Below, piece after piece: positions 3,215 through 54,856 of a DNA stretch of 64,000 nucleotides. The DNA lies in the IMG/VR virus record IMGVR_UViG_3300020195_000009, positions 124,001 to 188,000 of that record; one strand, given 5' to 3'. The position numbers and the translations under genes were made by a program. The notes beneath the pieces are model-generated. The model ran no database searches. It saw only the letters and a program-made list of their open reading frames with translations, and was not told the origin of the DNA. Numbering within the stretch: position 1 is the first letter of the stretch; the number at the start of each line of letters is the position of its first letter.

Positions 3215-3249
3215 CGCAAGACGAGAAGCTACAAGAGAAGTAGCGGCAC

Positions 3250-4551
3250 CTATGCTGCGAAGGCTTCCGGGAACTCCTCCAGGAGAACCCGCTTGAAGTC
3301 ATCGGATTCCGCAGCGAAGATCGCCCGGATGACGTCCAGACGATCCTCAAAGTTCAGACGGATCATCGCCAACCGACGCTTCCAGTGGTCACTGAACTCG
3401 TACTCGGTTGGGAAATCCTTGCAGATAGCCTTGGCGATGCTCTTTCGGGCGTCCGCCGTCCCATCCTTATCGATCTTGGATTGACCCTCTTCAGGGCCTC
3501 CCTGAAGAGCCCCTTGCTGAGGCTGGACCATCTGCATGTTTCCGAAGGCCTTCTTGGGGCCATTCGTGTTGCGGAAGGTCATCCCTTCGGCTTCGACGAC
3601 GCTCTCCTTGGGCTTACCGCCCATACCCGAGAGGTCGGCAATCTCAGTCCCACCCCCCGTTGAAAGGGTAGTCTGGATGCCCTCGGTCTGGGAGACCCGC
3701 TGGCCTTGGGGGATCTGAGCTACCACCCTGGACTGAGCCGGTGCTGCTTGAACCCGCTGAGGTTGAGCCGAAGCTTGACGCTGGCCCATCCCCGGCTGGT
3801 TGTTGGCCGCCATGTTGTGCGACTGAGCTTGAGGGGGGACGTAGCCGACGCCTCGGCTCATCACGTCGCCCTTATGAGCCTCCTTCTCAGCGAGATACTG
3901 GGAACGCTGATCTTCGGTCATCCTAGCGAGGACCTCTTGCTCCGAGATGCCCTCCCCCGGTCGAACCTTCACCTGTTCGGCAGTTCGGATGGCAGAACCC
4001 ACGGTGTCCGGGGTCACCCTCGTCTCCATCCTGGCGGGAGTCATGAGGGTACGAGCCACGGGAACACCGAACTCCGCGCCCCCCATCTCGATGGCTCCAG
4101 GACCCCCGTTGAAAGAACGAGCAACCCCACCACCTCGGTTCTGCTGAGCCCGAACGGATTGAGTCTGCTGTTGAGCGGCGGCTGCCCGGTCCCCACGGGA
4201 CATCACGATGCGCTCATCCGACTCGACGGTCGTGATGGCGTTCCTCTTGACCGGCTGCATCGGGTTCTGGCCAAAATCGTTGGCCGACCGGACCTGGATG
4301 TTGGCTGAGGGTGCCGCTTGAATGGGGTCGCTCGGGTCGTAAGTCTCGGAGGGGACGAGCCACCCGAGCTTGAGAGCCCCCCGAAGGGTCGGGAGTACGA
4401 ACCTCTGACCGCCGACTTCCACGTTGGTCCCGTCGAACAGGACCTCCATCTCCGTAGCAACCGTGTAACCCGTGCTTCCTAGAGCAAAGGACCGGGTTGA
4501 AACGTACGAAATCATCTGGCCGGGTTTGAATTTGATCTGATCCATCATCAT
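3250..4551 (-). CDS. Hypothetical protein with Q/G-rich low-complexity middle
   Basis: 433-aa ORF with SD-like GAGGAG upstream and genome-typical codon usage. Confidence 0.65.
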   Translation of the reverse strand: MMMDQIKFKPGQMISYVSTRSFALGSTGYTVATEMEVLFDGTNVEVGGQRFVLPTLRGALKLGWLVPSETYDPSDPIQAAPSANIQVRSANDFGQNPMQPVKRNAITTVESDERIVMSRGDRAAAAQQQTQSVRAQQNRGGGVARSFNGGPGAIEMGGAEFGVPVARTLMTPARMETRVTPDTVGSAIRTAEQVKVRPGEGISEQEVLARMTEDQRSQYLAEKEAHKGDVMSRGVGYVPPQAQSHNMAANNQPGMGQRQASAQPQRVQAAPAQSRVVAQIPQGQRVSQTEGIQTTLSTGGGTEIADLSGMGGKPKESVVEAEGMTFRNTNGPKKAFGNMQMVQPQQGALQGGPEEGQSKIDKDGTADARKSIAKAICKDFPTEYEFSDHWKRRLAMIRLNFEDRLDVIRAIFAAESDDFKRVLLEEFPEAFAA

Positions 4552-4616
4552 TTGGAGGCTCCTCTATAGGGGTGCTTACCCCCTACTCATAGGGATCCCA
4601 TAAAAGGATTCATGCC

Positions 4617-5081
4617 CTAGCCAGCCCGGGGGCCACAAAACTCACACGAGGCTTTAGGAACTCGATGCCACCTTACGTGTGTGTGGTAGCGACCTAGCTT
4701 TGACGCCTCTAGGTTCACCTGAGAAGAATCGACGGATCGAGACCAAGGTAGAGGCCCCCCGAAGTCCCATAGCTGCACTTCCTCTATGGCTAGAAACCCA
4801 AGGGAGAGGCGACATTCGTTGATAAAGATGAGCAGCTCTGAAGAAATCCAAAAGAACTCTCTGGTGAGAGTAATGCGGTCCTTCTTAAACTGGAAGTGGA
4901 CCTCTTTTTCAGGGGTGTTGGTCCAAGCGAGGAGGGCGATTCTTCGGAACGTATTTGTTCGGAGGTTGTAGAGCCGAGTGGTGATTCGAGCACTAACTCC
5001 GATCTTTACCACATTTGGCTCAACGAGGGCGATGTAGGTGCCCTTAGTTGCCGGGGCCGGAAGGTCTACGAGGTGAACCAT
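4617..5081 (-). CDS. T5orf172/MUG113-like GIY-YIG nuclease-domain protein
   Basis: TYIA...VKIGVS...RL..L...EKEVH..F...REFF pattern; C-terminal H/H/CxxC; lower GC than its neighbours. Confidence 0.65.
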   Translation of the reverse strand: MVHLVDLPAPATKGTYIALVEPNVVKIGVSARITTRLYNLRTNTFRRIALLAWTNTPEKEVHFQFKKDRITLTREFFWISSELLIFINECRLSLGFLAIEEVQLWDFGGPLPWSRSVDSSQVNLEASKLGRYHTHVRWHRVPKASCEFCGPRAG

Positions 5082-5092
5082 GGCTCTACAAA

Positions 5093-5131
5093 ACGAGCGG
5101 GGGTGGGCCCTCCTCAGGACCCACCCCTCGT
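5093..5131 (-). terminator. Intrinsic terminator after HU
   Basis: Hairpin ACGAGGGGTGGGTCC...GGGCCCACCCCCGCTCGT followed by TTT on the minus strand. Confidence 0.65.
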
Positions 5132-5147
5132 ATCGCCTCGTCGTCGG

Positions 5148-5477
5148 TCACTTCTTGCGGCTGGCTTTGCTCGTATCCGGGAGTTGCCCCACCGTCACCT
5201 TGAGGGCCTTCACGAACCGAGCCTTGAGCTTCTTGGACGCAGGCTTCGCTGGAACGGTCATCGTCGCTCCCGTTGCCGGGTTGCGGGCCTTCCGCTCCTG
5301 CTTCGGGGGGACCTTCACGAGGAGAAGCTTCGCGATCCCAGGGACAACGAACTTCCCATCCTTCTTGAGGGTCTTTCCGCAGACCAAGTTCAAGGCGTTG
5401 AGAAACGCCTTCACATGAGTCTTGGTCGTCCCGTCCATCTCTTCCGCGATTGCAGTGATGAGTTGCGTCTTTGTCAT
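5148..5477 (-). CDS. hup: HU-family DNA-binding protein
   Basis: MTKTQLITAIAE...FVVPGIAKL...RKARNPATG...PAK...KAR..KALK signature. Confidence 0.93.
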   Translation of the reverse strand: MTKTQLITAIAEEMDGTTKTHVKAFLNALNLVCGKTLKKDGKFVVPGIAKLLLVKVPPKQERKARNPATGATMTVPAKPASKKLKARFVKALKVTVGQLPDTSKASRKK

Positions 5478-5575
5478 CTGTTTCCTTCCGATCTAGCTAT
5501 CTTGAGTTAGGGGTACGCTCGTTAGTGAGCTATCTTAGCTTACCTACACCAGCCGTGTCACGTAAAAGCAGAAAA

Positions 5576-6049
5576 TCAAACAGAAGATGTTTGCCCGTTC
5601 ATCGATTCAGCCGCTTCAAGCATTTCCTGAAGGGCCGAATCACCTGACCCGGTTTCAACAGTACCTTGGGCCGGGTCTTCCGTAGACCAAAGCCCAGTGA
5701 GGGCTCCTGAGCCGCTGAGCATCAAAAGAGCCTGCTCTGCAAAGACAGTCTCCGTCTCCCTCAGCCTGTGGAAACCTTGGATGTGCTCCTGGACGGCCTT
5801 GTACGAGTCCTTGATGGCTTCCTCGTCCGTAGGTCCTGTCCCCTCCCAAGATTGATCGAAGGAGACTTGAATCCCCCCAACATCGTCGATCCCCTTGGTC
5901 CCTTGGAGTGAGGCCCTAAATTTCCAACCCCCAAGCCCAATGTCTGAAGGCGAGTGTTGAAACTCGAAGAGTACCTTGGTGACCGATTGAGGATCGATCG
6001 ACTTTCCGAGGAAGAGTAGGGCGTCAGCAAGGACCGAGAGGTGGCTCAT
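5576..6049 (-). CDS. Hypothetical protein
   Basis: 157-aa ORF preceded by GGTGTA motif and SD-like GAGAGG. Confidence 0.6.
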   Translation of the reverse strand: MSHLSVLADALLFLGKSIDPQSVTKVLFEFQHSPSDIGLGGWKFRASLQGTKGIDDVGGIQVSFDQSWEGTGPTDEEAIKDSYKAVQEHIQGFHRLRETETVFAEQALLMLSGSGALTGLWSTEDPAQGTVETGSGDSALQEMLEAAESMNGQTSSV

Positions 6050-6072
6050 GCCGCCTCTCTACACCAGAAGCC

Positions 6073-6681
6073 TCAGACTAGGGCTTGGTTTCCGATCTGC
6101 ACCTTGTGGAAAGTCCCGTTGAAGTCGCTTCCGGTAGCGACCCCACCGACCCCAACGAACACGTAACTAGGCTGAAAAGGAGCCCATGTGGCCGTTGGGT
6201 TGGTCCCCCACGTGGTCGTAGCCGTTTCACTCTGCCGAAACTTGGCGAACCTTGCCCCATCGATGGCTTGCTCAGAGTTCCAGGAGTAGCGAAGCCTCAT
6301 CTGGGCTCCCGCTACCTCTGCGGCGAATTGGCCGGCAGCGACCAAGACCCCCGCAGCGGATCGTTGATGGACGATAGCTTGGTTGTCTGTAGTGAGATAA
6401 ATTTCAAGAAACCGCGTTGGAGAAACGGCGGCATCCGCAAGGACCACAAGAGACCTGGAGGAGCCCGTAGCCCCAGTCGTGATCCACAGGTCAATGGCCC
6501 CTTTGATCCCTGAGATTTGCGTTACCGCGTAACGACCAACCCCAAGACCCGTGAAGACAAGTCCGGGGAGAAGCTCGGTTACCCTCGGTGCCCTCTGAGA
6601 GGCACCAACCATGGGGAGCCCAGGGTTCATCGAGAGGTCCCCGATCATGCCGGTTGGGTAGAGAATGAAGGGCTCGGTCAT
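6073..6681 (-). CDS. Putative virion protein, LamG/concanavalin-like beta-sandwich
   Basis: Beta-rich pattern GAIDLW...LEIYL...YSWN...FVG...FNGTFHKVQI; immediately downstream of the capsid gene; late motif 18 nt upstream. Confidence 0.5.
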   Translation of the reverse strand: MTEPFILYPTGMIGDLSMNPGLPMVGASQRAPRVTELLPGLVFTGLGVGRYAVTQISGIKGAIDLWITTGATGSSRSLVVLADAAVSPTRFLEIYLTTDNQAIVHQRSAAGVLVAAGQFAAEVAGAQMRLRYSWNSEQAIDGARFAKFRQSETATTTWGTNPTATWAPFQPSYVFVGVGGVATGSDFNGTFHKVQIGNQALV

Positions 6682-6699
6682 CGTACCCGAAGGCGGGAT

Positions 6700-6708
6700 A
6701 CAAGAAGA
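6700..6708 (-). promoter_or_regulatory. Putative late promoter motif TCnTCTTRT (representative copy)
   Basis: Similar copies at 3231, 13641, 16419, 21410, 28283, 29203 and 54848; most lie 16-21 nt before a start codon. Confidence 0.55.
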
Positions 6709-6732
6709 TCAGGCGGGAGGGGACGGTACCAC

Positions 6733-6772
6733 AAAGCCGAAAGGCCACCCCGGTTTCCCAGGATGGCCTTTC
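6733..6772 (-). terminator. Intrinsic terminator after major capsid gene
   Basis: GAAAGGCCATCCTGG-GAAA-CCGGGGTGGCCTTTC hairpin followed by GGCTTT. Confidence 0.65.
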
Positions 6773-6800
6773 AACAGTGGCTTATTCAGCCTGCTTCGTG

Positions 6801-7673
6801 TCAGACGCGGGTGACGATCAACCGTGTGAGACCACGTGGGTTGAACGCCCCTATACCCACGTTCTCGAAACATGAGAAGCCGATTGTCCGGGCCTTCGGA
6901 TCGTCCGCGGAAAGCACGGTGAGTTCCGTGCGGACCGGGAAGCGGCCGAAGTTCTCCGGCTCGGCGCAGATGTACACGAACCCGGCTGGAACCAGCCGCG
7001 ACGTGATGATCTGAGCACCCCAGAGAGTGGCCTGGAGGCCAGTCTTGAGGAGGACTGCCTGGCTCTCGATGTCCAGGATGTCCCGACCGAACTTGCGGAT
7101 GTCCGCGTAGTCCGTCGCATTCATGTAGATACGAGCGACCCGGAGGTCGTGACGTTCCACTTCTGCGAAGGCGTCCGCGAGGACCGAGGGGCTGATCGGA
7201 GCCACGACGTTGATGTCGGGGTTCGTCTGGCCGGGGAGGGTGTCGAAGCCCGAGACAGCGATGCTGTCGAGGACGGCGAACACACGCTCATCTTCGGCTG
7301 CCTGGATCTGCGCCTTGGCGAGGTCCTGGCTGCGTTCGATGAGGTCGAAGCGGCGCTCCTTGATCTGCGTGAGCGGGATCTCCGGGTTCGAGGCGATCTC
7401 GAACAGCGGGAAGATCACGCGACGAGGCTTCTGGATGGCGAGAATGTTCTCGCCCTCTTCGCCGACGACGTAGGCCGTGACGTCCGGGTCCTTGTCGTAG
7501 ATCGGAAGGGCTCCGTCCGGGAGCTGCTCCACCAAGAAGGTCTTACGACCCACTGCCGTGTAGTCACGGCGAAGGCGAAGCGGTTGGATCATGGAAGCAG
7601 CGAGCTTCGCTCGGCCAGCGGCCGTTTTGATGTACTCGCTGATGATCTGCTGCTTGATGTCGTTGGATACCAT
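6801..7673 (-). CDS. Major capsid protein (HK97 fold)
   Basis: 290 aa with very strong codon bias, downstream of protease-scaffold-decoration genes. The segment LAASMIQPLRLRRDY...PIYD...FEIASNPEI...AAEDERVF resembles, from recall only, capsids of Bxz1/cluster-C-like large phages. Confidence 0.85.
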   Translation of the reverse strand: MVSNDIKQQIISEYIKTAAGRAKLAASMIQPLRLRRDYTAVGRKTFLVEQLPDGALPIYDKDPDVTAYVVGEEGENILAIQKPRRVIFPLFEIASNPEIPLTQIKERRFDLIERSQDLAKAQIQAAEDERVFAVLDSIAVSGFDTLPGQTNPDINVVAPISPSVLADAFAEVERHDLRVARIYMNATDYADIRKFGRDILDIESQAVLLKTGLQATLWGAQIITSRLVPAGFVYICAEPENFGRFPVRTELTVLSADDPKARTIGFSCFENVGIGAFNPRGLTRLIVTRV

Positions 7674-7696
7674 GTTCGTGCCTTTCTTCCTTCCGC

Positions 7697-8347: not shown

Positions 8348-8471
8348 TGAATGCGTCTCCTATGGGCGGGAAAGCGTTGGGGGTCTTCACATCTACATTT
8401 GCATCTAGGCAACCACCGAAGTGATTGAGAGAGTCACCCAATGAAGGGTGATTGAAGGATTATTGAAGACC

Positions 8472-8496: not shown

Positions 8497-8502
8497 TAAT
8501 CC

Positions 8503-12473: not shown

Positions 12474-15400
12474 TCAGGGAGCGAGGGGACGGCCGTTCTC
12501 GGCCTTGCCTGTCTGGACCGCCTGCGACTGGTCATCCTTGTATTGACCCATGTAGGGCTCGTCCGAGTCCGTCTGCTTGGGGGCCGTGGGGGCGTTGAAC
12601 GTCGGCATGTACTTCTCATCCGAGTCCTGCTGGATGACCTTCGCAGACTTGAGGACTTCCACCTGGCGCTTGGCGAGAGACTCATCCCCGTAGGTCGCCT
12701 TCTCGATGTCATCGGCCGTCCGATCGAGATCGTTGACGATGTTCTTGGCGGTCTCGAAGTCCATCCCCCACTTCGTGTGGTTCTCCTGAATGTAACCGGC
12801 GACCTTGTCGAGCCGGTCCAGGATGACGTTGGCTTGCTCCTTGGCGAATTTGACGGTCATGGCGTTTCCCTCTGTCTCTTCCGTTGAGGAGGTCTTTCGG
12901 ACCCCTGGTTTGGTTCCCGAAGTGGCTTTCTCCACCTTGAACCCGAACTTCTTACCTACGTCTTGAAGGGCTTTGAAAGCCTTATCGATGTCCGCTTCGG
13001 GGACTTGAACCCAAACAAGGGTCTCCACACGAAGGCCTTCCTTCTCTTGATGGAAGGTGAGGAAGCCGCCGCCACGGGTGTCCACGACCCGGAGATTAAC
13101 GTCGTGCTCCTTACCGTCGTCACCTTCGGTCGGGATCCACGTCTTGTTGATGGCGTTGATCGTGTCGATGTTGAAGGGAACCGGCTTACGGGTGGGGACA
13201 AAGAGCACGGTGATCGTGTCCACGCCGTAACCGAAACCAGCCGTGTGGACCGTCAACAAGGTCTCGCCCGCAGGTTGCGAGGCCAGTTTGGCGAGCATCA
13301 TGTTGTACAACGGAGCGGAGATCGCTCCGTTGTACTTGCCATCCTCAGCTCGTTGAATCGCGAGGTCCAAAGCGGCTCGGAATCGAGCATCAGGAACCAT
13401 CCCTTCGACGGACTTCGACAGGATGGGGGACTTGAGCCAGTCCTTGGCGGCTGCCAAGAGAGTTCCAAAGTCACTCGGCCCGAGGTCTCGTTGGTGAACC
13501 TGATGCCACTCGGGGTACGAGGCAAACCCCTCGTGACCCTTTGGGTAAGGCTCAACGCCATGATAGATGGCCGTACGGACCGCTTGGCGAGCGTCATCGA
13601 TGGAAAGCGGAGGGGTGCCCATCTGCCAATTTCGGTCCCGATAAGAAGAATAGAGAGAAGCGACCCGTAACGAACGAAGCTCGTCAAATTGCTCCTGACG
13701 GGCCGCTCGCTCCGCCTTGGAGGGCTTACCTTCGTAACCAAGAGGCTTCACTGGAGGCTCCGGGGCGAGCGGGGGTTCAGGTTCAGGAACCTCAAAGGGT
13801 TTTGAGGGGGTCCGATAAGGATCTCCTTTGGCCAACTCCTTCTCATGCTTGATTTTCGCCTTAGTCCACTCGGTGTGCTCTCGTTCAAAGGCCCTGTAGG
13901 CCTTTTTCTGTTCTGCTTCCGCAGCTTTGAACTCACCAATAGACTTCTCGTACGCCTCACCTTCTGCTTGTTTGAGGAACTCCTGGACCTGAGCTTCCTT
14001 TTTGGGATCAAGCCCGCGTAGGGACTGACGGACCCGAACTCGGAAGACCATAGATGGGTCATCAAGCGCAGCCTTTACCTCGGCTGGGTAACGCTTACCT
14101 GCTTTGCGGATCATCTCCGTTGCAGCGGTTAGCTTGTTGGCTATTACTCTCGGGTGGTCCCGCTCGGAGATGACGTCGTTGGACTTTGGATCCAAGAAGC
14201 GCTCATGAGCGGCTCGGTAGTCCTCCCCTTGGAGGTTGGCTACCGCCACCATCTGCGTGTGGGGATCCAGCTCCTTAAGGTTGGATAGGAGCTTATTTCG
14301 CTCTTGGTCCTTCAACGCCTCGCGTTTGGTATTTCTTGAGACCAAGCCAAACCTCTCATCAGGATCCTCACTAACTTGAGGGAACCCGGCAGATGCTTTA
14401 CTAAAGAGGTTTTGAGCTGCCTCTTTAGCTTTGGACTCTCGTTCTTCAGGTGGGAGTGAAGCAGAGGTCAGCGATAGATGAGCGAGGCTGGGTGCTAGGT
14501 GACTGGGAACACCAGACGATTTGAGGGCGTGTGAAACACGCATTTGGGTCGTAACACTAGCCGCTACAACTGCTACCCGATGCTCTTGTACAGCTTGAGC
14601 CTGCTCTTCTTTAGACAGCTCCTCAAATGGCTTTTCAATGCCGTCCGAAGCCTTCCCCTTCTTAGGGAGGGTCTTCACCAGAGCGGGATCCGTGGTGAAT
14701 GAAGCCCCACCATTTTGAATCTCATCTTGCACACTTCGAGGAGCTGGGAGGGACTTGAAGTCTAGGTAGTTCGCAACGACAGCCTTTACATCCTCTGGGT
14801 GCATCAACCTTAATTGAACACGGACCTGAGGAGGTAGGTCTGTGGTAAAGAGTAACTCTGTAGCCTCATGTATCTGTTGCTGAGTGGGGGGCTTTCGCTT
14901 CGGCGGGGGGAAGTCTTGGGCGCTCGTAGGCTTCTTCTCGGGAGCCTTCTCCTTCTCAGGGGCCTTCTCACCTTCAGGAGTCTTCTCACCTTCAGGAGTC
15001 TTCTCGGGGGTTTTCTCTTCCTCGGGGGGTTTCTTGGTGTCGACCTCAGCGGGAGCTTCCTGAGGTCTCTTCGTCCGCTGGGCTTTAGCTACAGGCTTTG
15101 GAACAAGCTCAAGAGCCTTCTTGAGGTCACCAAGGGTTTTGATTTCAGGTGGGAAATCTGCCTTGGGGAAGACCTCTTTTACAGGCTTGCCTGGGTTGCT
15201 ATCGGCGACAGCTTGCAACGCGGTAGCTGGATTTGAAAACGTACCTATGGCGCTCTTTAGGGCCGGGTCGTTCTTCGCTCGCTCTTGAAGCTCTTCCCCT
15301 CCGATACGAGCATCCAATTCCTTGATTGGCTCGTAGGGTGCCTTCGGCTCAGGGTTGAACTTGTCTCGCTTCTTGGGGGCCTCTTGTTTCGATTTAGGCT

Positions 15401-16400: not shown

Positions 16401-16436
16401 GCCCACCCCGGCTGGGCGAAAAGACGAGTATCGGTC

Positions 16437-18245: not shown

Positions 18246-18249
18246 TTAT

Positions 18250-21388: not shown

Positions 21389-23394
21389 CGTGTTCTCCCC
21401 AAGGGCTTTACAAGACGATCCCGGTGGACCCCGTGTTGACGCATCCGAGCCATCTGGAAGTGCTGCAAGGACCTCGGCCCACCACTCTGCCGTGGGTCAT
21501 TAGGGTTCCTCGGGGCCGTGATCTTCATGGTGCTGATCCGCTCCATTGAGAGCCAAATGGCTCGAATGAGAGCGTCGGATACATCGTCATGAGCCCCGCT
21601 GATCTGCGGCGCCTCCACGACAATCTGGTTACGTGCCGTCTGCTTGGCTTGGAGGCTCAGCATCTCTTCAATGAGAGGAGAATGCTTGGATTGCGACTCA
21701 CCCACCTTGGGCAGCGGGTAGTCGTAGAGGATCACTCGCTTGTCGAAGATGAGAAGCTTCGCCGCCTGGAACATCCGGCTTGTCGCATCACGGTTGTAGA
21801 ACTCACTCTTGAACTGCTTTAGGCCCTTCTTGTGGAGGGCCTCCTCCAAAGGGAGCCCATTCCAACGATCGAACGATCCGGCTGTGATATAGAAACGTTT
21901 CGTGAGGAGAACGATCCACTTGGCGATCTCCTCGAAGTCCAAACGCTCCGCCATCTCCAGCGTCTTTGCGTAATCACATAGAGGGTTCGTGAGGTGCGGG
22001 TTGGACTCCTTCCACGGGACCCCGGCGTACCAAGCCTCGTGGTAATCAAGGATGATCTTCGGACCCTCGGTATGCGTAATCGCAATCGCGGTCCCGTCTC
22101 CTATGAGCCCAACGTCGATCCCCATTTGGTGAGGGAACCTAGGCGGGCCGTACGTTTTGGGCCGTAGGTCTGGGCGAACGCATTCGATGAGGTCGGTCTC
22201 TCGTTCAATCCAACCTCGAACACGATCGGAGAACAGAGCCCCATGCTCCGTCATGAAGACCGTCGGGTCCTCATGGTACTTCTCACGGTAGTAGCTCGTT
22301 GGGATGGTCGGGTTGACCTCCCACGTCGGAGCCTGAATGACGAGCATGTTCTCCGAGCCGGGACCCCGACTCATTCCAAGGTGGAACAGCTCGTAGAACT
22401 TACCAGCCTTGTTCAAGGGAGACGAAATGCAAATGACGCGGGCTTCGGACTGAGTCTCCGATCCGTGAATAGGGAGTCCCGTGTCGAGGTCCTTAGCGGA
22501 GAAGGCAGCCACGGACGGAGTGATAGCGTCGTAAATGTCCTTAGCGCTGGACTTACCTTTATCCTGAAAGTGGGCGATCTCGTCCAGGATGATGACGATG
22601 TTACCAGAGCCTCGAAGGCCCTTTGAAATGCTCGCCTTGAAGGTAACCCGGATACTCGCCTTACCGTTGAACGAGGTGAACTTTCCGTCCGTATGTCGGA
22701 CTGTAGGACCGTAACGCTCGATATCATAAGGGGTTCGGAGCTGAACGTAGGAGAGTGTGTTGTTGGCGATGTACGGTTGGAAGAACTCGCACTTCGCCAT
22801 GTGCGAAGTCACGTCATTAAAGAGAAGGCCTGCTTGGTCCTTATCGGTAGCGACCGAGATGATTTGAATGCGGTTGCCGTTTGGGAGCCCGTAGTACTCC
22901 TGGGGGTTACCAAGAGAGAGCAGGCGGTACAGCTCGTAGCTAGCGAAAACAGCGGACAATGTCGTCTTGCCAGCCCTCCTACCGATGGGAAGCGTGAGCT
23001 GACGACGAAGATGGTCTTGTTCCCCGATGTTGCAACGACCCTCGTTGTAGAGGTAGCTCAGGTACTCCTTCTCCGTGAAAGTGTAGAGCGTTTTTGTGTT
23101 GAACATGTCCGAGATCCGAATCCTTCGGGTCTCGTCTTCTGGAAGCTTATCGTCAAGAGGCAGGTGGTAGTACAGCTTCACGATGAAGCGTTGTACCGGG
23201 AACAACCTCATATTGAGGCCCCAGGCAGACTCAACGTAGTTTAGAACGTTGAAGATACGGGTGGTCCGGCCGCTAGATCCAACAGAGGCTAGATCCCCAT
23301 TACCCGACTGTTCATCAGAGATGACCCGAGCACGATGCCCGGCACTCCGAATCAGATGGGAAATGCTTGACGATGACTTTTGCTCCCGAGCCAC
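21385..23394 (-). CDS. terL: Terminase large subunit
   Basis: Walker A GRRAGKT, Walker B IIILDE, coupling motif ISSP, RNase H-like nuclease GIDVG...DGTA and HDDVSDA. Confidence 0.92.
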   Translation of the reverse strand: MAREQKSSSSISHLIRSAGHRARVISDEQSGNGDLASVGSSGRTTRIFNVLNYVESAWGLNMRLFPVQRFIVKLYYHLPLDDKLPEDETRRIRISDMFNTKTLYTFTEKEYLSYLYNEGRCNIGEQDHLRRQLTLPIGRRAGKTTLSAVFASYELYRLLSLGNPQEYYGLPNGNRIQIISVATDKDQAGLLFNDVTSHMAKCEFFQPYIANNTLSYVQLRTPYDIERYGPTVRHTDGKFTSFNGKASIRVTFKASISKGLRGSGNIVIILDEIAHFQDKGKSSAKDIYDAITPSVAAFSAKDLDTGLPIHGSETQSEARVICISSPLNKAGKFYELFHLGMSRGPGSENMLVIQAPTWEVNPTIPTSYYREKYHEDPTVFMTEHGALFSDRVRGWIERETDLIECVRPDLRPKTYGPPRFPHQMGIDVGLIGDGTAIAITHTEGPKIILDYHEAWYAGVPWKESNPHLTNPLCDYAKTLEMAERLDFEEIAKWIVLLTKRFYITAGSFDRWNGLPLEEALHKKGLKQFKSEFYNRDATSRMFQAAKLLIFDKRVILYDYPLPKVGESQSKHSPLIEEMLSLQAKQTARNQIVVEAPQISGAHDDVSDALIRAIWLSMERISTMKITAPRNPNDPRQSGGPRSLQHFQMARMRQHGVHRDRLVKPLGRTR

Positions 23395-28272: not shown

Positions 28273-29175
28273 TCACGTAATCACAAGATGAATGTCAATA
28301 TCCAGGTAGCTGTTGGAGCTGTACCCGGAGACCCTGAGTTTCTCCGTGTAGGTCCCCTGGAGGAAGTTGTCTGGGGGCACTGCGGTCACCGTGATGACGT
28401 CCGACCCCAAAGAGGCAAGCGTCCCGGAGGCCGGTAGGAAGCTGGTAAGCCAATCCGAAAGCCCCGTAAGCTTCTGGATTTGGTAATCGAGGATGGACCC
28501 CGCTGGTCCCGAGTTCTGCACCGTGAACGTCTGGACCGGAATCGACGGGAACGGGCCCGAAATAGGCTTCACGACCGAGAAGGTCAGGAGCGTGGGGAGC
28601 AGGAAGATGGTGGCCTTGGGTCGAACCACAATCGTGACCGGGAACATCTGGGGGTTGTTGACCGCCGCAGGATCTTGAACCGCGATGCTTTCAACGTACG
28701 GGCTTGAGGCCGCAAGGAGGTTAGTTGCATCCACTTCAACTTGGAACTGGCCCGATTCATTCAACGCTAGGTTGCCTACGTTGGCCGGGGTGACCCGTAC
28801 GTAGGCCGCTGAGGTGGTGAGAGTCACTCCAAGGATAGACCCGTACACCCCGTCGTTGGTGAGAAGAACAAACTCCCCAGGCCCGAACCCACGGCCCTCG
28901 TCCACGTTGAACGTGAGAGACGAAGGCGGCCCAAGCAGGATGCTCGGGGAGAAGTTGGCTCGAAGCTCGTCGATGGACTCGGCCATCGCGGCCACAACCT
29001 CCCCTGGGATGGGGATGGAGTCTCTCAGCAGGCCATAGGGAGAAACAATGTCGAGCACCGAGTAGACCGGGTTCGACTGCGACACATCCAGCCGTGTTGT
29101 CCATCGCCACTTACCGGCAGCAACGGGCAACTCGAACTTGTAGTCGTGGACCTTCAGGTTCGAGACTAGCGGCAC
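28273..29175 (-). CDS. Virion protein with two Ig-like (BACON-like) domains
   Basis: PSSLTF...TSAAYVRVTP and PTLLTF...QTFTVQNSG...WL...PASGTL...GTYTE; likely GTG start at 29175 after GAGGGA (track start 29199). Confidence 0.6.
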   Translation of the reverse strand: MPLVSNLKVHDYKFELPVAAGKWRWTTRLDVSQSNPVYSVLDIVSPYGLLRDSIPIPGEVVAAMAESIDELRANFSPSILLGPPSSLTFNVDEGRGFGPGEFVLLTNDGVYGSILGVTLTTSAAYVRVTPANVGNLALNESGQFQVEVDATNLLAASSPYVESIAVQDPAAVNNPQMFPVTIVVRPKATIFLLPTLLTFSVVKPISGPFPSIPVQTFTVQNSGPAGSILDYQIQKLTGLSDWLTSFLPASGTLASLGSDVITVTAVPPDNFLQGTYTEKLRVSGYSSNSYLDIDIHLVIT

Positions 29176-29220
29176 TTGCAGTTCCCTCTTGAACCACAAG
29201 CCATAAGAAGAAACGGGGCG

Positions 29221-29398: not shown

Positions 29399-30028
29399 TC
29401 AGAAACAACCATCCCCACCGCGGTTTGACCACTGCGGCAAGCGAACTTCGCGCAAGATGTTGAACTTCTTGGAAGCTATACTGGAGAAAACCTTGTGGTA
29501 AGGGACGAACTTGCCCTCTTCGCCGGCACGTTTTTCCAGTGTCTTGACGGCCCCAAAGAAACGATGACGCACTCGACCTTGCGTGAGCCCGAGTCGCGTA
29601 GCGACTTCACTCTGGCAGGTCGTTTGCCACATCCCCACGAGGATATCGACGTCGATAGGTTTGAACGGAACGTCGGGGAGGTCCTGACGCATCTCATCTT
29701 CGCTGATTTGCGGAATTGAAAGAAGGAACCGTATGCGTTGTAAGCCCCGATCCAGCCGATAGCTGATCGCCGCTTGCGTGACGCCGAAAATCTCAGCGAT
29801 GTCGGCTTGGCGCTTCTTTTGGATGTAGTAGAGGAAGATGAGATCAGCCTCTCGCTCTGGGATCCGATCCAGTAGGGGCTTGACCTGGTTCTCGTAGTTG
29901 AGGGTTGATAGGAGGGGCTCTACGTTGGGCTCCTCTTCCTCATCAAGATCATCAAAGAGCCGGTCTGGGGCTGCGAATCTGTTGGCGAGTTCTGCCGGGT
30001 CAACCGAAATAGTGAAGCCGCCACTCAT
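29399..30028 (-). CDS. Transcription factor with two tandem sigma70 region-4-like HTH domains
   Basis: IPEREADLIFLYY...QADIAEIFGVTQAAISYRLDRG and QSEVATRLGLTQGRVRHRFFGA; no recognisable region 2. Confidence 0.7.
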   Translation of the reverse strand: MSGGFTISVDPAELANRFAAPDRLFDDLDEEEEPNVEPLLSTLNYENQVKPLLDRIPEREADLIFLYYIQKKRQADIAEIFGVTQAAISYRLDRGLQRIRFLLSIPQISEDEMRQDLPDVPFKPIDVDILVGMWQTTCQSEVATRLGLTQGRVRHRFFGAVKTLEKRAGEEGKFVPYHKVFSSIASKKFNILREVRLPQWSNRGGDGCF

Positions 30029-30049: not shown

Positions 30050-32095
30050 TCACTCGGAAAAGGCGAGTTGTTCTTGTCGCTTCGCAAATCCTCGTGAAGC
30101 GGTCTGAAAGAAGGGTTCCACTATCGAGTCGGCTTGGATGCTGAGCCCACCGATGACTTCGGAGGCGATCTTTGCATCAGGACTCGGAGCGATCTCATCA
30201 AACGAGAGATCGTCGCGTAGCTGCATGAGATTCAAATTGAGGCGGACCTGAGCTTCGGCCGCACGGATCTTCGCGTACTGCCCGGCGGTGATGCCAGACA
30301 AGTTGGATGCGAAGACCTCATCAACTGAACCGTAGTTTTTCAAGAGCGCCGTCAGAACTTTCGTAGGTACCCGGCCACCGACACCCGGTACCTCATCTGA
30401 ATCGTCCCCGAGTAACGCCCGAAGTTGGACCATGCGTTCGGGTGTGACTCCATATTCTTCCACAACTTTGTCCCGGTCGTAAAGGGTCTCCTGTCGATTT
30501 CCGACCTTGGGTGATAGCACGATGTCAGTCAATGTCACCAACTGTAAGAAGTCTTGGTCCGTAGAGAGGATGACGTTCCTCTGACCTTTGAGCTTGCCTC
30601 GGACAAGACAAGCGATGACGTCATCCGTTTCTTCCTCGGCGTTGAATGCTTGGGTGACACCCAGGAGGGGGAGGATGTTTCGCAGGCGACTCATCTGGCT
30701 CTCAGGGCCAACAGAGGCACCATTCAAGGACCCGTTGGCCGCTCGCTCGGCTGCTCGCTTCTCACGCCGCTTAATCTTGTACCCCTCAAAGAGGTTGATA
30801 CGACGCTGCGGGGATCCGTCCCAAACAACGTAAATTGAGGCATTTGCAAATCTCTTCTTGAGACTAGCCAGGCTTTTCAAGAACCCAAACACGAGGGAGG
30901 TGGGGTTCCCTTCTGCGTCCGTGAGGGGTTTCTTCATGGCCCCGAGGGCATGAGAGACTCGGTACGCGAGGTTGTGCCCATCGATGATGACGTTCTCGAA
31001 CATGTCCGATCTCCCTGTTAGCGCCTCAACGTTACCCACGTTACGGGCCAGCCCATTCAATCTCTGTACGATGTCTTGGAGCCACTGAGACTCAAGCATT
31101 TTTGCTTCTACTTGAGCGTTGAGTGTCGGTAAGGTGGCGAGAGCTGGGGCCGCTTGGAGGTATTGAAACCAAGCTGGACCTCGTTCTATCAACGAGTCCA
31201 TTTGATGCACAAGGCCGTATTTTTCAGCGACCTTGTCCATCACTGGAGTGGGCTTTACTTGGAGACCGAGCTTACGACTACGATCCAACCAACCACCAAA
31301 GAGTTGAACCCCTTGGTGACTATGCAACAAAAGGGTGATTGGAGGAGGGCCTGAGGGGAGCGTCATCTGACGGCGGATGTGTTTGACGCGATCCAACCGT
31401 ACAAGGCCTAGCTCGATATTACCGAGGTCTCGGACGGCCTGCTCGACCTCCCTAAACCCAGAGGGAACCCACGACAGAATGGGTTGAACCAACCGACTCC
31501 ACTCTCGGATCCGTTCGATCTTCGTCATGAACGGAGAGAATGTGGGAAGATCCGACTGGTCCTTCGAGACGAATCGGAGAAACGACCTGGGGAGCGTGAC
31601 TATGGCTTCTTTGGATCGAAGCTTGATATAGACCTGAACTGAATCGGTCTCTGGGATCTCCTCGATGATCCGGCCGTTGATGCCCTTGTAGGGGCCGTTC
31701 ATCACCTGAACTTCATCCCCTACTTCAATACCTTGTTCTGTTTCAACGTGTATTTGACGACGCATCTTGTCGATGTCCACGTCTCGAACAGTCGCCATCT
31801 CACGGTAGGTGGTCTTTCGGTCCAAAGCCCGAGCTACCGTCAGAACCGAAGCGACGTACCGCGTACCCTCAAGCCGCATATACGCAGAGTCAGGGAGGGT
31901 CCTACGTACAAAGACGTAGTTGTCGATCAGCTTGTGGATGACACGGCTATCTCCGACGATGGACACGGAGGCAGGGATGAAAATCTCGACCGTCTTGTCT
32001 CGGAATACACGAGCTAGAGCGGAGGCGAGGACCTCTGGGTCTTCGTCTTCTCCTTGAGGGGAAAGCTCTAAGACGACCCAATCACGCGTCGCCAC
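30050..32095 (-). CDS. NusG/RfaH-like (NGN+KOW) domain fused to a PolA/T5-FEN-type 5'-3' exonuclease
   Basis: N-terminal WVVL, IFIP, NYVFV and KOW IEVGDEVQVMNGPYKGING; C-terminal IIDGHN, VWDG, ETDDVIA, STDQD, GDDSD and H3TH motif. Confidence 0.85.
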   Translation of the reverse strand: MATRDWVVLELSPQGEDEDPEVLASALARVFRDKTVEIFIPASVSIVGDSRVIHKLIDNYVFVRRTLPDSAYMRLEGTRYVASVLTVARALDRKTTYREMATVRDVDIDKMRRQIHVETEQGIEVGDEVQVMNGPYKGINGRIIEEIPETDSVQVYIKLRSKEAIVTLPRSFLRFVSKDQSDLPTFSPFMTKIERIREWSRLVQPILSWVPSGFREVEQAVRDLGNIELGLVRLDRVKHIRRQMTLPSGPPPITLLLHSHQGVQLFGGWLDRSRKLGLQVKPTPVMDKVAEKYGLVHQMDSLIERGPAWFQYLQAAPALATLPTLNAQVEAKMLESQWLQDIVQRLNGLARNVGNVEALTGRSDMFENVIIDGHNLAYRVSHALGAMKKPLTDAEGNPTSLVFGFLKSLASLKKRFANASIYVVWDGSPQRRINLFEGYKIKRREKRAAERAANGSLNGASVGPESQMSRLRNILPLLGVTQAFNAEEETDDVIACLVRGKLKGQRNVILSTDQDFLQLVTLTDIVLSPKVGNRQETLYDRDKVVEEYGVTPERMVQLRALLGDDSDEVPGVGGRVPTKVLTALLKNYGSVDEVFASNLSGITAGQYAKIRAAEAQVRLNLNLMQLRDDLSFDEIAPSPDAKIASEVIGGLSIQADSIVEPFFQTASRGFAKRQEQLAFSE

Positions 32096-53001: not shown

Positions 53002-53005
53002 GCCC

Positions 53006-53953
53006 TTACCCGCAAAATGCGGCAGCGATGGCCGACTTCAGTTGGAAGGACAGGTTAACGTAAGAGGATTCGTACCTCTCGCTGAGAGTTTTTAACTCCC
53101 CCCACAATTGAAACCATCTGTCGGATTTTGCTCGGTTTCGCATTGTAGTTAGGTCTTCAAGCACGTCCTGGTTGATAGCTCTTTGAGGGTCGACTCGGAC
53201 CACCAGCACGTCATGAACGAGGAAACAAAGGAATCGAAACGCTAGAGGCAACTCTTTGCTAAGTTCGTCGATAGACGCGAAAGAGGACGAAAAGTCCCCC
53301 GTCGCACCCGCAAGCAAAAGCCCGAGTACGGAGTCACGAATTGCGATCCGGTTCGAGCCCCAATACCGGGCGGCTCTACCTACCGAACCTTCTCCCATAC
53401 GGGTGTAGACAAGAGCTTTATCGGGATCCGACTCGAACCTAGAAATTCGCTCAAAGATGAACGAATCACTGAGTTTTCGGAAGGGGACTCTCCCGCAACG
53501 CGACCGGATGGTGGGGAGTACACGCTCGTAGGATTCGGCAAGCATGAAGAAGCGGGAAGCTGCTGGGGGTTCCTCCAAGGTCTTGAGGATTGCGTTAGCT
53601 GCCGGGATCGTCATTCGATCGGCACCATCCACGATGAAGAAGCGGTATGGTGCCGAGGTCGGGTACGAGAAGGATTGCGTAACAATCGCTCGGATTGCGT
53701 CGACTCCTATCTCTTTGTCTGATGGGGCGGACACGACGACTACGTCCGGGTGGGCTCCATGTTCTACTTGAACGTACTCCGGGCTGCCCACACCCCGTTG
53801 CTTGCTGATCAGTTCTTTGACAGCGGAGGTGACCGAGAACTTACGACCCGTACCCTCTTCCCCGATGAGGAGTAACGGAGAAGAGATTTGACCCTCGATC
53901 ACTCTCCGCAGGTAACCCACGGCCTCGTCTTGGCCCACCACATCACTCAACAC
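53006..53953 (-). CDS. holB: DNA polymerase III delta-prime subunit
   Basis: VVGQ, GEEGTGR, HPDV, IGVDAIR, ADRMTIPAANAILKTLEEPP, LPTIRSRC. Confidence 0.9.
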   Translation of the reverse strand: MLSDVVGQDEAVGYLRRVIEGQISSPLLLIGEEGTGRKFSVTSAVKELISKQRGVGSPEYVQVEHGAHPDVVVVSAPSDKEIGVDAIRAIVTQSFSYPTSAPYRFFIVDGADRMTIPAANAILKTLEEPPAASRFFMLAESYERVLPTIRSRCGRVPFRKLSDSFIFERISRFESDPDKALVYTRMGEGSVGRAARYWGSNRIAIRDSVLGLLLAGATGDFSSSFASIDELSKELPLAFRFLCFLVHDVLVVRVDPQRAINQDVLEDLTTMRNRAKSDRWFQLWGELKTLSERYESSYVNLSFQLKSAIAAAFCG

Positions 53954-54140
53954 GACCCACCGGAAGACTGTTTGGCGCAGACTTGGGTTCCACGGGCTCG
54001 ATGACGAGACGAACGAAGTAGTTCTGCTCGCATTGACCGCAGATCATCCTGAAGACTTCCTGCCCGCTTTGACCTAGAACCCCCGCACATCCTGTACGGG
54101 TACACCGCATCATACCTACACGGGAGTCAGAGCCATCCAT
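53943..54140 (-). CDS. Small zinc-ribbon protein
   Basis: CTRTGC...CGQC; overlaps both neighbours. Confidence 0.55.
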   Translation of the reverse strand: MDGSDSRVGMMRCTRTGCAGVLGQSGQEVFRMICGQCEQNYFVRLVIEPVEPKSAPNSLPVGRVE

Positions 54141-54826
54141 TAGAGCTTCACTTTACCCCGAGACTGCAAGAATCGAAGAACCGAACCGTAGACCTCATCC
54201 CCAGCAGCAAGGGTACCGTTGCGGATAGATCGGTCGGTTGCATCCAACCACTTGTCGATGGTTTCTTGGCTCCACGACATCTTGTAGTAGGCCATGCTGA
54301 GGAATTGTTTGCGGATTGAATCCTTCCGCTCGAAGGGGATGTTCCCCGTAAGCCAGAACAGAACAGCCATCGACATGGCGTAGCCCCGCTGCTCCAGGCG
54401 GACTCTCCCTGGGGAGGGCCAAGGGATCAGGCAGGCTAGACCCAAACCAAAGGCGATGAGGGACCACCAACCAAAGAAAAAAGCGAGCACCATCCCCGTG
54501 ATGAGGAACGGGATCAGAAGTACTTGGGGGAGGGCGTAGCTCAGGCGAAACCAAAGCGGGCTCGCCTTCGTGTCGAGAAGGTGGACCCGCTCATGAGCCA
54601 GCGTGATGAGAGATCGGCCCGGATCCTTCTCGTAGGACTCCTGGGTGGGGAACCAGACCATCGGGTAGAAGGTCGTCGTGTACGACGTCATATAGCCGGG
54701 GTTGAACGGCTTCATGATCAGACCAAGCAGCTTGTGGAAGTTCGACGTGTTCTTCCAGTCGAGCTTGAAGCCCGGTACCACTGCGGCTGTGTCTGCTTCA
54801 AATGCCCGAAGGTCGGTCAGGTCCAT
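54140..54826 (-). CDS. Membrane-anchored HExxH zinc metallopeptidase-like protein
   Basis: LAHERVH, then two hydrophobic helices and a downstream E (RLEQRGY). Confidence 0.6.
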   Translation of the reverse strand: MDLTDLRAFEADTAAVVPGFKLDWKNTSNFHKLLGLIMKPFNPGYMTSYTTTFYPMVWFPTQESYEKDPGRSLITLAHERVHLLDTKASPLWFRLSYALPQVLLIPFLITGMVLAFFFGWWSLIAFGLGLACLIPWPSPGRVRLEQRGYAMSMAVLFWLTGNIPFERKDSIRKQFLSMAYYKMSWSQETIDKWLDATDRSIRNGTLAAGDEVYGSVLRFLQSRGKVKL

Positions 54827-54856
54827 TGCGGCAAGGGAGCCTTGCCCAAAAGGAGA

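What the first reader, a model, noticed from the sequence alone, without database searches (positions are those of the whole stretch)
3231..54856. Putative phage late promoter TCnTCTTRT with near-fixed spacing to start codons
Seen on the minus strand, with distance to start: TTCTCTTGT 3231 (16 nt), TCTTCTTGT 6700 (18), TCTTCTTAT 13641 (18), TCGTCTTTT 16419 (18), TCGTCTTGT 21410 (21), TCATCTTGT 28283 (18), TCTTCTTAT 29203 (27), TCTCCTTTT 54848 (21). Looser copies occur near 4600, 8451-8468 and 19823. Nearly all are before virion-module genes, several without a clear SD. Inference: a single-box promoter unlike sigma70, giving very short leaders.
Basis: partly seen in the sequence, partly recalled or inferred. 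Interest (0 to 1): 0.6.

Follow-up and report, generated by a model that had tools for sequence, protein, structure and literature searches.

The report
Virion-gene promoter box in huge phages

Summary
The window is part of a 286-kb contig from an uncultivated huge phage (microbial-mat metagenome).

A data-driven consensus is rATCTTcTT(A/G)T(A/G), which I call "class B". It is about 10-fold denser in sense-oriented upstream intergenic DNA than in coding or antisense DNA. That holds when each genome is left out of training. It is conserved at orthologous positions in relatives (19/40 vs 12/257 pairs). It is concentrated in the virion/giant-protein block.

- **Well supported sites:** 4600, 6700, 13641 and 29203.
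- **Supported by conservation:** 3231, 16419, 54848 and about 8451.
- **Probably codon-driven:** 21410 and 28283.

Spacing to the start ranges from 2 to 106 nt (mode 10-19). Sites within 22 nt lack Shine-Dalgarno (SD) sequences (14%); farther ones carry them (65%). This suggests the mRNA 5' end lies just downstream of the box.

A second box, yGGTGTA ("class A"), sits 15-16 nt before start codons of non-virion genes in all four genomes. Its spacer lacks SD sequences, and it also precedes the phage tmRNA. This fits a -10-like promoter that makes leaderless mRNAs.

No RNA data exist, so promoter function and late timing are inferred.

The parts
6699..6709 (-). Class B box ATCTTCTTGTA, 18 nt before the ATG of gene 6073-6681. 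It lies about 25 nt after the strong terminator hairpin that follows the major capsid gene.
   Evidence: 14.7 bits; terminator at 6736-6775; no SD in the leader
4599..4609 (-). Class B box ATCCTTTTATG, about 47 nt before the ATG of the 433-aa gene 3250-4551. The leader carries the SD GAGGAG.
   Evidence: 14.0 bits; CTTGTC/TTTGTC variants at the same place in G001, G003 and G004 while the flanks diverge
29202..29212 (-). Class B box TTCTTCTTATG, 27 nt before GTG 29175 of gene 28273-29175. The leader carries the SD GAGGG.
   Evidence: 14.7 bits; a CTT(G/A/T)TA-type box is kept in 10 related loci with otherwise diverged spacers; sequence
13640..13650 (-). Class B box TTCTTCTTATC inside the 1310-aa ORF (12474-16406), 18 nt before the in-frame ATG at 13622. 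Candidate internal promoter for a nested 382-aa C-terminal product.
   Evidence: 14.2 bits. The nucleotides are identical (codons TAT TCT TCT TAT) in G001, G004, L011 and L013, although the surrounding protein is only 38-54% identical. The downstream Met (WQM) is conserved in most.
3230..3240 (-). Weaker class B box CTTCTCTTGTA, 16 nt before the ATG of gene 2468-3214. Followed at once by a strong hairpin (3195-3230) with the AUG in its loop.
   Evidence: 6.3 bits; CTCTTGTAG conserved in G001 intergenic DNA; hairpin z=-5.0, G001 counterpart z=-3.6
54847..54857 (-). Class B-like box ATCTCCTTTTG, 21 nt before the ATG of gene 54140-54826.
   Evidence: 9.3 bits; TCTCCTTGTCC in G001 and TCTCTTGTGA in G003 at the orthologous place, with diverged flanks
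16419..16427 (-). Conserved T-rich block TCGTCTTTT before the 1310-aa gene (start ATG 16400). A poor match to the matrix.
   Evidence: 3.3 bits; TA(G/C)T..CTTTTGG block conserved in seven related loci
8450..8460 (-). Loose class B copy ATCCTTCAATC after a hairpin, about 113 nt before gene 7697-8347 (the gene ahead of the capsid gene).
   Evidence: 7.5 bits; G001 has a 12.4-bit box ATCTACTTGTA at the orthologous place; sequence
21409..21419 (-). ATCGTCTTGTA inside the last codons of the large terminase gene (TerL). Probably not functional.
   Evidence: Codes for DRLV of TerL; reads CGTATTGCA in L002 and is absent in L003 and L006; the SD GGGGAGA follows
28283..28291 (-). TCATCTTGT inside the last codons of gene 28273-29175. 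Probably codon-driven.
   Evidence: Conserved as coding I(H/R)LVI; the SD GAGGG follows; 6.9 bits
6060..6065 (-). Class A box GGTGTA, 16 nt (box start to ATG) before gene 5576-6049. No SD.
   Evidence: Conserved in G001 (TTCTGGTGTA); genome-wide spacing peak at 15-16 nt
62942..62947 (-). Class A box GGTGTA, 16 nt before the mature 5' end of the phage tmRNA.
   Evidence: tmRNA at 62576-62925, 76.9 bits; GGTGTA 16-18 nt upstream also in G002 and G003; a TTGACA-N17-TACTTA promoter at that place in G004 and G005
63960..63965 (-). Class A box GGTGTA directly after a tRNA gene (tRNA-Val(gac), mapped only on locus L094) and 24 nt before ATG 63941. Here an SD (GGAG) is present.
   Evidence: Same arrangement in G001; tRNA map
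6736..6775 (-). Strong intrinsic terminator hairpin after the major capsid gene (6801-7673).
   Evidence: 18-bp stem; -37 to -46 kcal/mol hairpins at the same place in all four genomes, with different stem sequences
29399..30028 (-). Gene for a 209-aa protein with sigma-70 region 4 only (two helix-turn-helix units). Candidate transcription factor.
   Evidence: PF04545 E=1e-13; TIGR02937 positions 108-162, 50.2 bits; conserved in all relatives
30050..32095 (-). Gene for a NusG-like (NGN+KOW) domain fused to a 5'-3' exonuclease. Implies use of a multisubunit (host) RNA polymerase.
   Evidence: Pfam PF02357, PF00467, PF02739, PF01367

Best explanation

It is most likely read by the host's multisubunit RNA polymerase, redirected by phage factors. 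The clade encodes three candidates: an ECF-like sigma factor, a protein with sigma region 4 only, and a NusG-like protein.

Transcription would begin a few nucleotides downstream of the box. Genes with the box within about 22 nt of the start codon would then get leaders too short for an SD. Genes with the box farther away would get ordinary SD-bearing leaders.

A sister element, yGGTGTA (class A), acts as a -10-like box placed so that transcription starts at or beside the start codon, giving leaderless mRNA. It serves mostly non-virion genes and the phage tmRNA.

**Shown:** existence of both boxes, strand bias, conservation, gene-class bias and the SD dichotomy.
**Inferred:** promoter function, TSS position, late timing, and which protein reads each box.
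For: **Class B**
- Hits of 11 bits or more occur at 0.82/kb in sense-oriented upstream intergenic DNA. The rates are 0.05-0.08/kb in coding DNA and 0.06/kb in other intergenic DNA.
- With matrices trained on the other three genomes, the enrichment is still 4-12-fold.
- Orthologous conservation is 19/40 against 12/257 pairs (p=1.7e-11). Twelve column-permuted matrices gave p=0.015-0.94.
- The box is kept in otherwise diverged spacers before the orthologs of genes 28273, 12474, 54140, 2468 and 3250.
- The internal site 13641 is kept at synonymous positions.
- No upstream terminator stem precedes the sites, so the box is not a terminator U-tract.
- The 6700 box lies between a strong conserved terminator and a start codon.
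- SD 4-mers are present in 4/29 sites spaced 22 nt or less and in 24/37 sites spaced farther. The rate for other genes is 46%.
- Virion-block bias: G000 12 in / 4 out against 79/178 for other genes (p=5.5e-4); G001 11/7 against 92/258.

**Class A**
- It is the top upstream hexamer in all four genomes.
- Spacing peaks sharply at 15-16 nt.
- GGTGTA-N9-10-ATG counts against the reversed-pattern control are 15 vs 1, 48 vs 5 and 47 vs 3.
- SD is present in only 10/90 genes.
- A T lies four nucleotides after the A in 30/36 G003 sites, giving TANNNT.
- The box lies 16-18 nt before the tmRNA in three genomes, where G004 and G005 have a canonical -35/-10 promoter.

**Factors and precedents**
- Sigma-like and NusG-like genes are present.
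- The sigma gene has TTGACA-N17/18-TAnnnn upstream.
- phiEco32 offers a single-element precedent, tAATGTAtA, with the TSS 6-8 bp downstream (PMC8948821).
- A TANNNT signal about 12 nt before the start is a known mark of leaderless genes (PMC3160421).
Against: - No transcript data exist. Only DNA runs hold this phage.
- The box carries only about 10 bits. Coding DNA holds more hits in absolute number (171 against 58), so sequence alone cannot define a promoter.
- A free-running EM drifts to a diffuse SD-like motif. A pyrimidine-rich motif of similar likelihood appears on the antisense strand (LLR 146 vs 123).
- The hairpin that begins immediately after the 3231 box, and after its G001 ortholog, would be truncated by a TSS 6-8 nt downstream.
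- The 435-aa sigma has a region 4, yet no -35-like element accompanies either box.
- A T7-like RNA polymerase cannot be excluded, because the PF00940 control rang nowhere.
- The virion-block boundaries were set by eye.
Confidence: 0.6

Rival explanations
1. The box acts in RNA, not DNA. It could be a pyrimidine-rich 5'-UTR element, such as a binding site for ribosomal protein S1 or a translational enhancer. It could also be a processing or stability site that sets the mRNA 5' end in long polycistronic transcripts.
For: - It is sense-strand specific and lies close to start codons.
- Genes are tightly packed on one strand over about 185 kb, so many are probably co-transcribed.
- Hairpins begin right after some boxes.
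- Six GGTGTA boxes start 0-25 nt after tRNA 3' ends, where RNA processing would create a 5' end.
Against: - The conserved positions (A1, T2, C3, T10) look like sequence-specific recognition rather than a mere U-rich tract.
- The 6700 box follows a strong terminator, so that gene needs new initiation.
- Class A, and a class B-like word in G001, precede the untranslated tmRNA at the place where G004 and G005 have a canonical promoter.
- The absence of SD specifically at short spacing is what a transcription start predicts.
Confidence: 0.15
2. The box is an operator or activator site for a phage DNA-binding protein, for example the 209-aa protein with sigma region 4 only. It would act like the MotA box of T4 middle promoters. 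The true core promoter would lie elsewhere.
For: - The box is a contiguous 11-nt element of about 10 bits, typical of a helix-turn-helix site.
- A conserved sigma-region-4/HTH protein is encoded inside the virion-gene region.
- Some GGTGTA boxes occur as inverted pairs (TACACC..GGTGTA), especially in G003.
Against: - No second conserved element (-10-like or otherwise) lies at fixed distance from the box between -35 and +30.
- At several sites there is no room for a separate -10 between the box and the start codon: 16-18 nt at 3231, 6700 and 13641.
Confidence: 0.15
3. There is no signal. The reader assembled chance and codon-driven pyrimidine-rich words that happen to lie near start codons.
For: - One-mismatch copies are abundant (115 in the window, 81 expected).
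- Sites 21410 and 28283 sit in conserved codons.
- Sites 16419 and 3231 score poorly.
- The pattern was defined after looking at the sequence.
Against: - Leave-one-genome-out enrichment.
- Orthologous conservation against permuted-matrix controls.
- Sense:antisense ratio of 23:4 for TCTTAT in intergenic DNA of four genomes.
- Synonymous-site conservation at 13641.
Confidence: 0.07

Closest known systems
phiEco32 middle/late promoters read by host RNA polymerase with phage sigma gp36 (tAATGTAtA)
   Same: Both are single conserved elements without a -35 and lie upstream of middle/late phage genes. The known TSS is 6-8 bp downstream of the element (PMC8948821). A T-R-T-A / TGTA core is shared with GGTGTA and CTTGTA.
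   Different: The flanks differ: ATCTTCTT or GG here, against tAA there. gp36 lacks region 4, whereas the 435-aa sigma here has one plus an HNH-like insert. No homology to gp36 was tested. Nothing here is experimentally mapped.
T4-type late promoters (TATAAATA, read by gp55/gp33/sliding clamp)
   Same: Both are single -10-region boxes that switch host polymerase to virion genes, without a -35.
   Different: The sequence is unrelated. No gp55, gp33 or clamp dependence was examined. Many leaders here are far shorter.
TANNNT promoters of leaderless genes (Actinobacteria, Deinococcus-Thermus)
   Same: For class A, the T of TA lies 11-12 nt before the start codon, as in leaderless genes (PMC3160421). 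SD is absent. G003 sites read TAyrGT.
   Different: The invariant GGTG directly abutting TA is not the usual TGn extended -10. T at -7 is weak outside G003.
T4 MotA box of middle promoters
   Same: Both are single conserved upstream boxes recognised by a phage factor.
   Different: The MotA box sits at -30 and needs a sigma70 -10 element 12-13 bp downstream. No such partner element is found here.

Membership tests
Sigma70-type -35/-10 promoter | TTGACA-like hexamer 16-18 nt upstream of a TATAAT-like hexamer | tested here: not met
   No position from -35 to -1 of the class B box reaches 0.25 bits. The same holds for class A. Consensus scan of window 1-20000 found 2 sites against 4.5 expected. 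Canonical TTGACA-N17/18-TAnnnn does occur elsewhere, before the sigma gene and before the G004 tmRNA.
Single-element phage promoters (phiEco32 gp36 type) | One conserved box, no -35 | tested here: met
   An 11-nt box with no second element
Single-element phage promoters (phiEco32 gp36 type) | TSS 6-8 bp downstream of the box | not testable with these tools
   No RNA run holds the phage. Indirect support comes from the SD dichotomy. Indirect evidence against comes from the hairpin at 3231.
Single-element phage promoters (phiEco32 gp36 type) | Read by a phage sigma lacking region 4 | tested here: not met
   The clade's 435-aa sigma aligns to TIGR02937 through region 4 (alignment). Which protein reads the box is unknown.
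T4-type late promoter | TATAAATA box | tested here: not met
   The consensus is rATCTTcTTrTr.
Leaderless-gene TANNNT promoter (class A only) | TA about 12 nt upstream of the start codon, no SD | tested here: met
   Spacing of 15-16 nt from the box start puts TA at -12/-11. SD present in 11% against 46%.
Leaderless-gene TANNNT promoter (class A only) | T at the sixth position of the hexamer | tested here: inconclusive
   30/36 in G003, 11/27 in G001, 5/16 in G000, 3/11 in G004
Intrinsic terminator U-tract | GC-rich stem immediately upstream of the T-run | tested here: not met
   Upstream 42-45 nt fold like background at the eight sites and at 66 sites overall (8% below the 5th percentile).
Shine-Dalgarno ribosome-binding site | Complementarity to the 16S 3' tail, 5-9 nt before the start | tested here: not met
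   The box is pyrimidine-rich and 2-106 nt from the start. Ordinary GGAG/AGGA SDs are used by 46% of other genes.

The most novel reading that the evidence does not exclude
A clade of 290-440-kb phages runs its own two-tier promoter code on the host polymerase. About a quarter of its intergenic regions carry GGTGTA boxes that start transcription at the start codon, giving mass leaderless expression of non-virion genes and the phage tmRNA. Virion genes, including a nested product inside a 1310-aa gene, use ATCTTCTTRTA boxes. Both codes would be read through an early-expressed ECF-like sigma that carries an HNH-like insertion, helped by a sigma-region-4-only protein and a NusG-exonuclease fusion.
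Probability: 0.3. Interest if true: 0.65.

Novelty: new variant of a known kind. Interest (0 to 1): 0.5.

Why it matters
Huge phages from metagenomes have almost no mapped regulatory signals. Two conserved, easily scanned boxes would let one split their hundreds of unknown genes into expression classes. They would also help correct start codons, flag nested genes such as the 382-aa product inside the 1310-aa ORF, and choose templates for in vitro work with the clade's unusual sigma factor. The leaderless geometry also constrains the unknown host to one that translates leaderless mRNA well.

Tried and rejected
- **Near-identical phage records.** None found.
- **Free ZOOPS EM.** It drifted to a diffuse SD-like motif. 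Only fixed-occupancy EM held the box. Mononucleotide shuffles gave far lower likelihood, but the antisense strand gave a comparable pyrimidine motif.
- **Terminator U-tract.** Rejected.
- **General hairpin association.** Rejected: 8% against 5% expected.
- **-35-like partner element.** None found.
- **Phage RNA polymerase.** No PF00562 or PF00623 hit in five genomes. The PF00940 search is uninformative because its control rang nowhere. No conserved DxDGD-type motif in large proteins.
- **Sigma identification.** PDB sequence search with the sigma alone gave nothing. A profile found only the HNH-like insert. No phage-record homolog.
- **Cultured relative.** Tunturiibacter phage Tunturi_5 (capsid 48% identical) shows no GGTGTA-N9-10-ATG enrichment (4 vs 3). 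LR745208 shows only mild enrichment (13 vs 5).
- **tRNA genes.** Their upstream regions show no shared box.
- **Host inference from GroEL.** Ambiguous: 44-48% identity to Armatimonadota, Actinomycetota and Nitrospirota.
- **Literature.** Text searches found no report of these motifs.

Full report
**Context**

The window is bases 124,001-188,000 of a 286,005-bp IMG/VR viral contig (57% GC; CheckV estimates about 60% complete). All window genes lie on the minus strand, inside a roughly 185-kb one-strand block.

Identified genes:

| Coordinates | Product |
|---|---|
| 6801-7673 | major capsid protein |
| 9997-11664 | head protease |
| 16437-18245 | portal |
| 21385-23394 | large terminase (TerL) |
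| 45504-47765 | RecD-like helicase |
| 47771-49663 | NAD ligase |
| 50062-52002 | ribonucleotide reductase |
| 55516-57195 | GroEL |
| 30050-32095 | NusG-like/5'-3' exonuclease fusion |
| 29399-30028 | protein with sigma region 4 only |

Relatives with 57-84% identical terminase exist in IMG/VR. Three of them have direct terminal repeats: G001 (407 kb), G003 (437 kb) and G004 (380 kb); CheckV rates G001 and G003 100% complete and G004 79%. I fetched these (G004 whole, the first 400 kb each of G001 and G003) for comparison. The capsid protein is 84% identical to that of an uncultured 485-kb phage, 48% to Tunturiibacter phage Tunturi_5 and 38% to Bacillus phage G. The DNA occurs in microbial-mat and sediment metagenomes, and no RNA run holds it.

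**Checking the observation**

Only five of the eight fit TCnTCTTRT exactly.
- Exact matches are 9 against 3.5 expected.
- With one mismatch there are 115 against 81 expected, so loose copies carry no weight alone.

**Refining the motif**

Expectation-maximisation on 736 intergenic regions of the four genomes, with occupancy held low, converged from several seeds on gATCTTcTT(A/G)T (about 10 bits). The G000 sites make the pattern plain: ATCCTTTTATG, ATCTTCTTGTA, TTCTTCTTATG, ATCTTTTGATA and similar.

Scored with this matrix:
- Sites 4600, 6700, 13641 and 29203 are top-tier (14.0-14.7 bits; genome frequency 1e-5 or less).
- Sites 21410, 54848, 19823, 405, 8451, 28283 and 3231 are intermediate.
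- Site 16419 is poor.

**Is the box more than chance?**

- *Orientation and location.* Hits of 11 bits or more are 0.82/kb in sense-oriented upstream intergenic DNA. They are 0.05-0.08/kb in coding DNA and 0.06/kb in the remaining intergenic DNA.
- *Cross-validation.* Matrices trained without the tested genome still give 4-12-fold enrichment.
- *Simple word counts.* TCTTAT is 23 sense against 4 antisense in intergenic DNA of the four genomes, with 3.6 expected from genome density.
- *Orthology.* When a G000 gene has a hit, its orthologs in G001, G003 or G004 have one in 19 of 40 pairs, against 12 of 257 otherwise (p=1.7e-11). Twelve column-permuted matrices gave 2-8 conserved pairs (p=0.015-0.94).

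By eye, the box survives in spacers that have otherwise diverged. This holds before the orthologs of genes 28273-29175, 12474-16400, 54140-54826, 2468-3214 and 3250-4551.

- Site 21410 encodes DRLV at the terminase C-terminus. It is altered in L002, absent in L003 and L006, and followed by a good SD.
- Site 28283 encodes I(H/R)LVI of the upstream gene and is also followed by an SD.

**The internal site**

Site 13641 lies inside the 1310-aa ORF. The word cta-TTCTTCTTATC is nucleotide-identical in G001, G004, L011 and L013, even though the surrounding protein segment is only 38-54% identical. All use the codons TAT TCT TCT TAT for YSSY in 52-58% GC genomes. An in-frame Met (WQM) 18 nt downstream is kept in most. 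This points to selection on the DNA or RNA word itself. It suggests an internal start producing a 382-aa C-terminal product.

**What the box is not**

- It is not a terminator U-tract. The 42-45 nt upstream fold like background.
- It is not an SD. It is pyrimidine-rich and variably spaced, and the genome uses ordinary GGAG/AGGA SDs.
- It has no -35-like or other partner element.
- Sigma70-type sites are not enriched nearby.

**Evidence bearing on mechanism**

- *Spacing.* The distance from box to start is 2-106 nt (median 24.5, mode 10-19).
- *SD dichotomy.* SD 4-mers are present in 4/29 sites spaced 22 nt or less, in 24/37 sites spaced farther, and in 46% of other genes. This is what one expects if the mRNA 5' end lies shortly downstream of the box.
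- *Terminator context.* The 6700 box sits between a very strong terminator after the capsid gene and a start codon. That terminator is conserved as a structure in all four genomes, at -37 to -46 kcal/mol.
- *Gene class.* Class B genes concentrate in the virion/giant-protein block: G000 12 in / 4 out against 79/178 (p=5.5e-4); G001 11/7 against 92/258. I set the block limits by eye.
- *A counter-indication.* A strong hairpin begins immediately after the 3231 box (z=-5.0) and after its G001 ortholog (z=-3.6). A TSS 6-8 nt downstream would truncate it. The exact TSS is therefore open.

The strongest upstream signal in all four genomes is yGGTGTA. EM places it in about 28% of intergenic regions.

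- *Spacing.* Its distance to the start codon is sharply 15-16 nt. GGTGTA-N9-10-ATG counts are 15, 48 and 47 in G000, G001 and G003. The reversed-pattern control gives 1, 5 and 3. At N13-14 the counts drop to 3, 11 and 12.
- *SD.* The spacer lacks SD: 10/90 genes against 46%.
- *Position -1.* It is a pyrimidine in 80/90 sites.
- *TANNNT in G003.* A T lies four bases after the A in 30/36 sites, giving GGTG-TAyrGT.
- *Geometry.* The TA lies 11-12 nt before the start codon. This is the published signature of leaderless genes (PMC3160421).
- *Conservation.* Class A is conserved at orthologs (p=9e-9).
- *Gene class.* It avoids the virion block: 3/13 in G000 and 2/25 in G001.
- *An untranslated gene.* The box also sits 16-18 nt before the mature 5' end of the phage tmRNA in G000, G002 and G003. 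At that place G004 and G005 carry a canonical TTGACA-N17-TACTTA, and G001 carries a class B-like CCTTGTCA. A box that serves an RNA gene not translated from its 5' end is a transcription signal, not a translation signal.
- *SD at longer spacing.* When GGTGTA is farther from the start (window 63960, 24 nt), an SD is present, and this too is conserved.

**Who reads the boxes**

Pfam searches found no multisubunit polymerase domains in five genomes. The T7-type search is uninformative, because its control failed.

The clade encodes a 435-aa ECF-like sigma. Regions 2.1-2.2 and 2.3-4 match TIGR02937, and they are split by an HNH-like insert related to ZRANB3. Its gene is preceded by TTGACA-N17/18-TAnnnn in three genomes. 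This suggests early expression by unmodified host holoenzyme.

Together with the region-4-only protein and the NusG-like fusion in the window, this points to a host polymerase reprogrammed by phage factors. Which factor reads which box is unknown.

**Comparison with known systems**

The nearest precedent is phiEco32. Its middle and late promoters are a single element, tAATGTAtA, read with phage sigma gp36, and the TSS lies 6-8 bp downstream (PMC8948821). The T-R-T-A core is shared, but the flanks and the sigma architecture differ.

T4 late promoters are analogous in logic but unrelated in sequence. Text searches found no report of either box.

I class the finding as a new variant of a known kind.

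**Limits**

- Gene calls came from my own crude caller, so some starts are wrong.
- The four genomes are related, so counts are not fully independent.
- Function, timing and TSS are inferred, not shown.

Noticed in passing
window 62576-62925 (-): A phage-encoded tmRNA (Rfam 76.9 bits) lies next to three tRNA genes (62973-63224). All five relatives checked also carry a tmRNA. My ORF call 62351-62632 overlaps it and is probably spurious.
   Followed up: partly
G000:C1:186001-199000 (locus L094; starts at window 62001): A cluster of 24 tRNA genes, all on the minus strand, is interleaved with ORFs. Six ORFs have their GGTGTA box starting 0-25 nt after a tRNA 3' end.
   Followed up: partly
window 30050-32095 (-): One 681-aa protein joins a NusG-like NGN+KOW module to a 5'-3' exonuclease (FEN-type) domain. 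This is an unusual fusion for a transcription elongation factor.
   Followed up: no
G000:C1:208445-209752 (-) = L001:439-1746: An ECF-like sigma factor is split between regions 2.2 and 2.3 by an insert of about 100-230 aa. The insert has CxxC pairs and matches the HNH domain of ZRANB3 (E=9e-6). The protein is conserved in G001, G002, G004 and G005.
   Followed up: partly
window 8385-8412 (-): The word ATGTAGAT (in ...CTAGATG..ATGTAGATG...) is perfectly conserved in all four genomes, about 55 nt before the gene that precedes the capsid gene, in an otherwise variable spacer. ATGTAG is 30 sense against 7 antisense in intergenic DNA. It may be a third TGTA-type promoter for the capsid operon.
   Followed up: partly
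window 3195-3230 (-): A 12-bp perfect-stem hairpin (-25 kcal/mol, z=-5) presents the AUG of gene 2468-3214 in its loop. The G001 ortholog has a hairpin starting at the same base, but its AUG lies after the stem.
   Followed up: partly
G003, many loci (e.g. C1:204275-204292, 215618-215635): In G003 many GGTGTA boxes are the 3' arm of a perfect palindrome (..CCATACACC-N4-GGTGTATGG..). A family of small paralogous genes there shares a longer upstream repeat (GGGTTAAGATCC...GGTGTA). G003's version of the class B box appears to be tATTTGT(C/G)TG.
   Followed up: no
window 19822-19847 (-): The class B-like word AATTCTTTATG sits in the loop of an 8-bp palindrome made of two EcoRI sites (CTGAATTC...GAATTCAG). 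It lies inside the 3' end of gene 19801-20316, just before the next start codon.
   Followed up: no
window 29200-29398: A GC-rich spacer of about 200 nt, without an ORF call, lies between the sigma-region-4 gene and the class B box at 29203. Rfam found nothing there.
   Followed up: no
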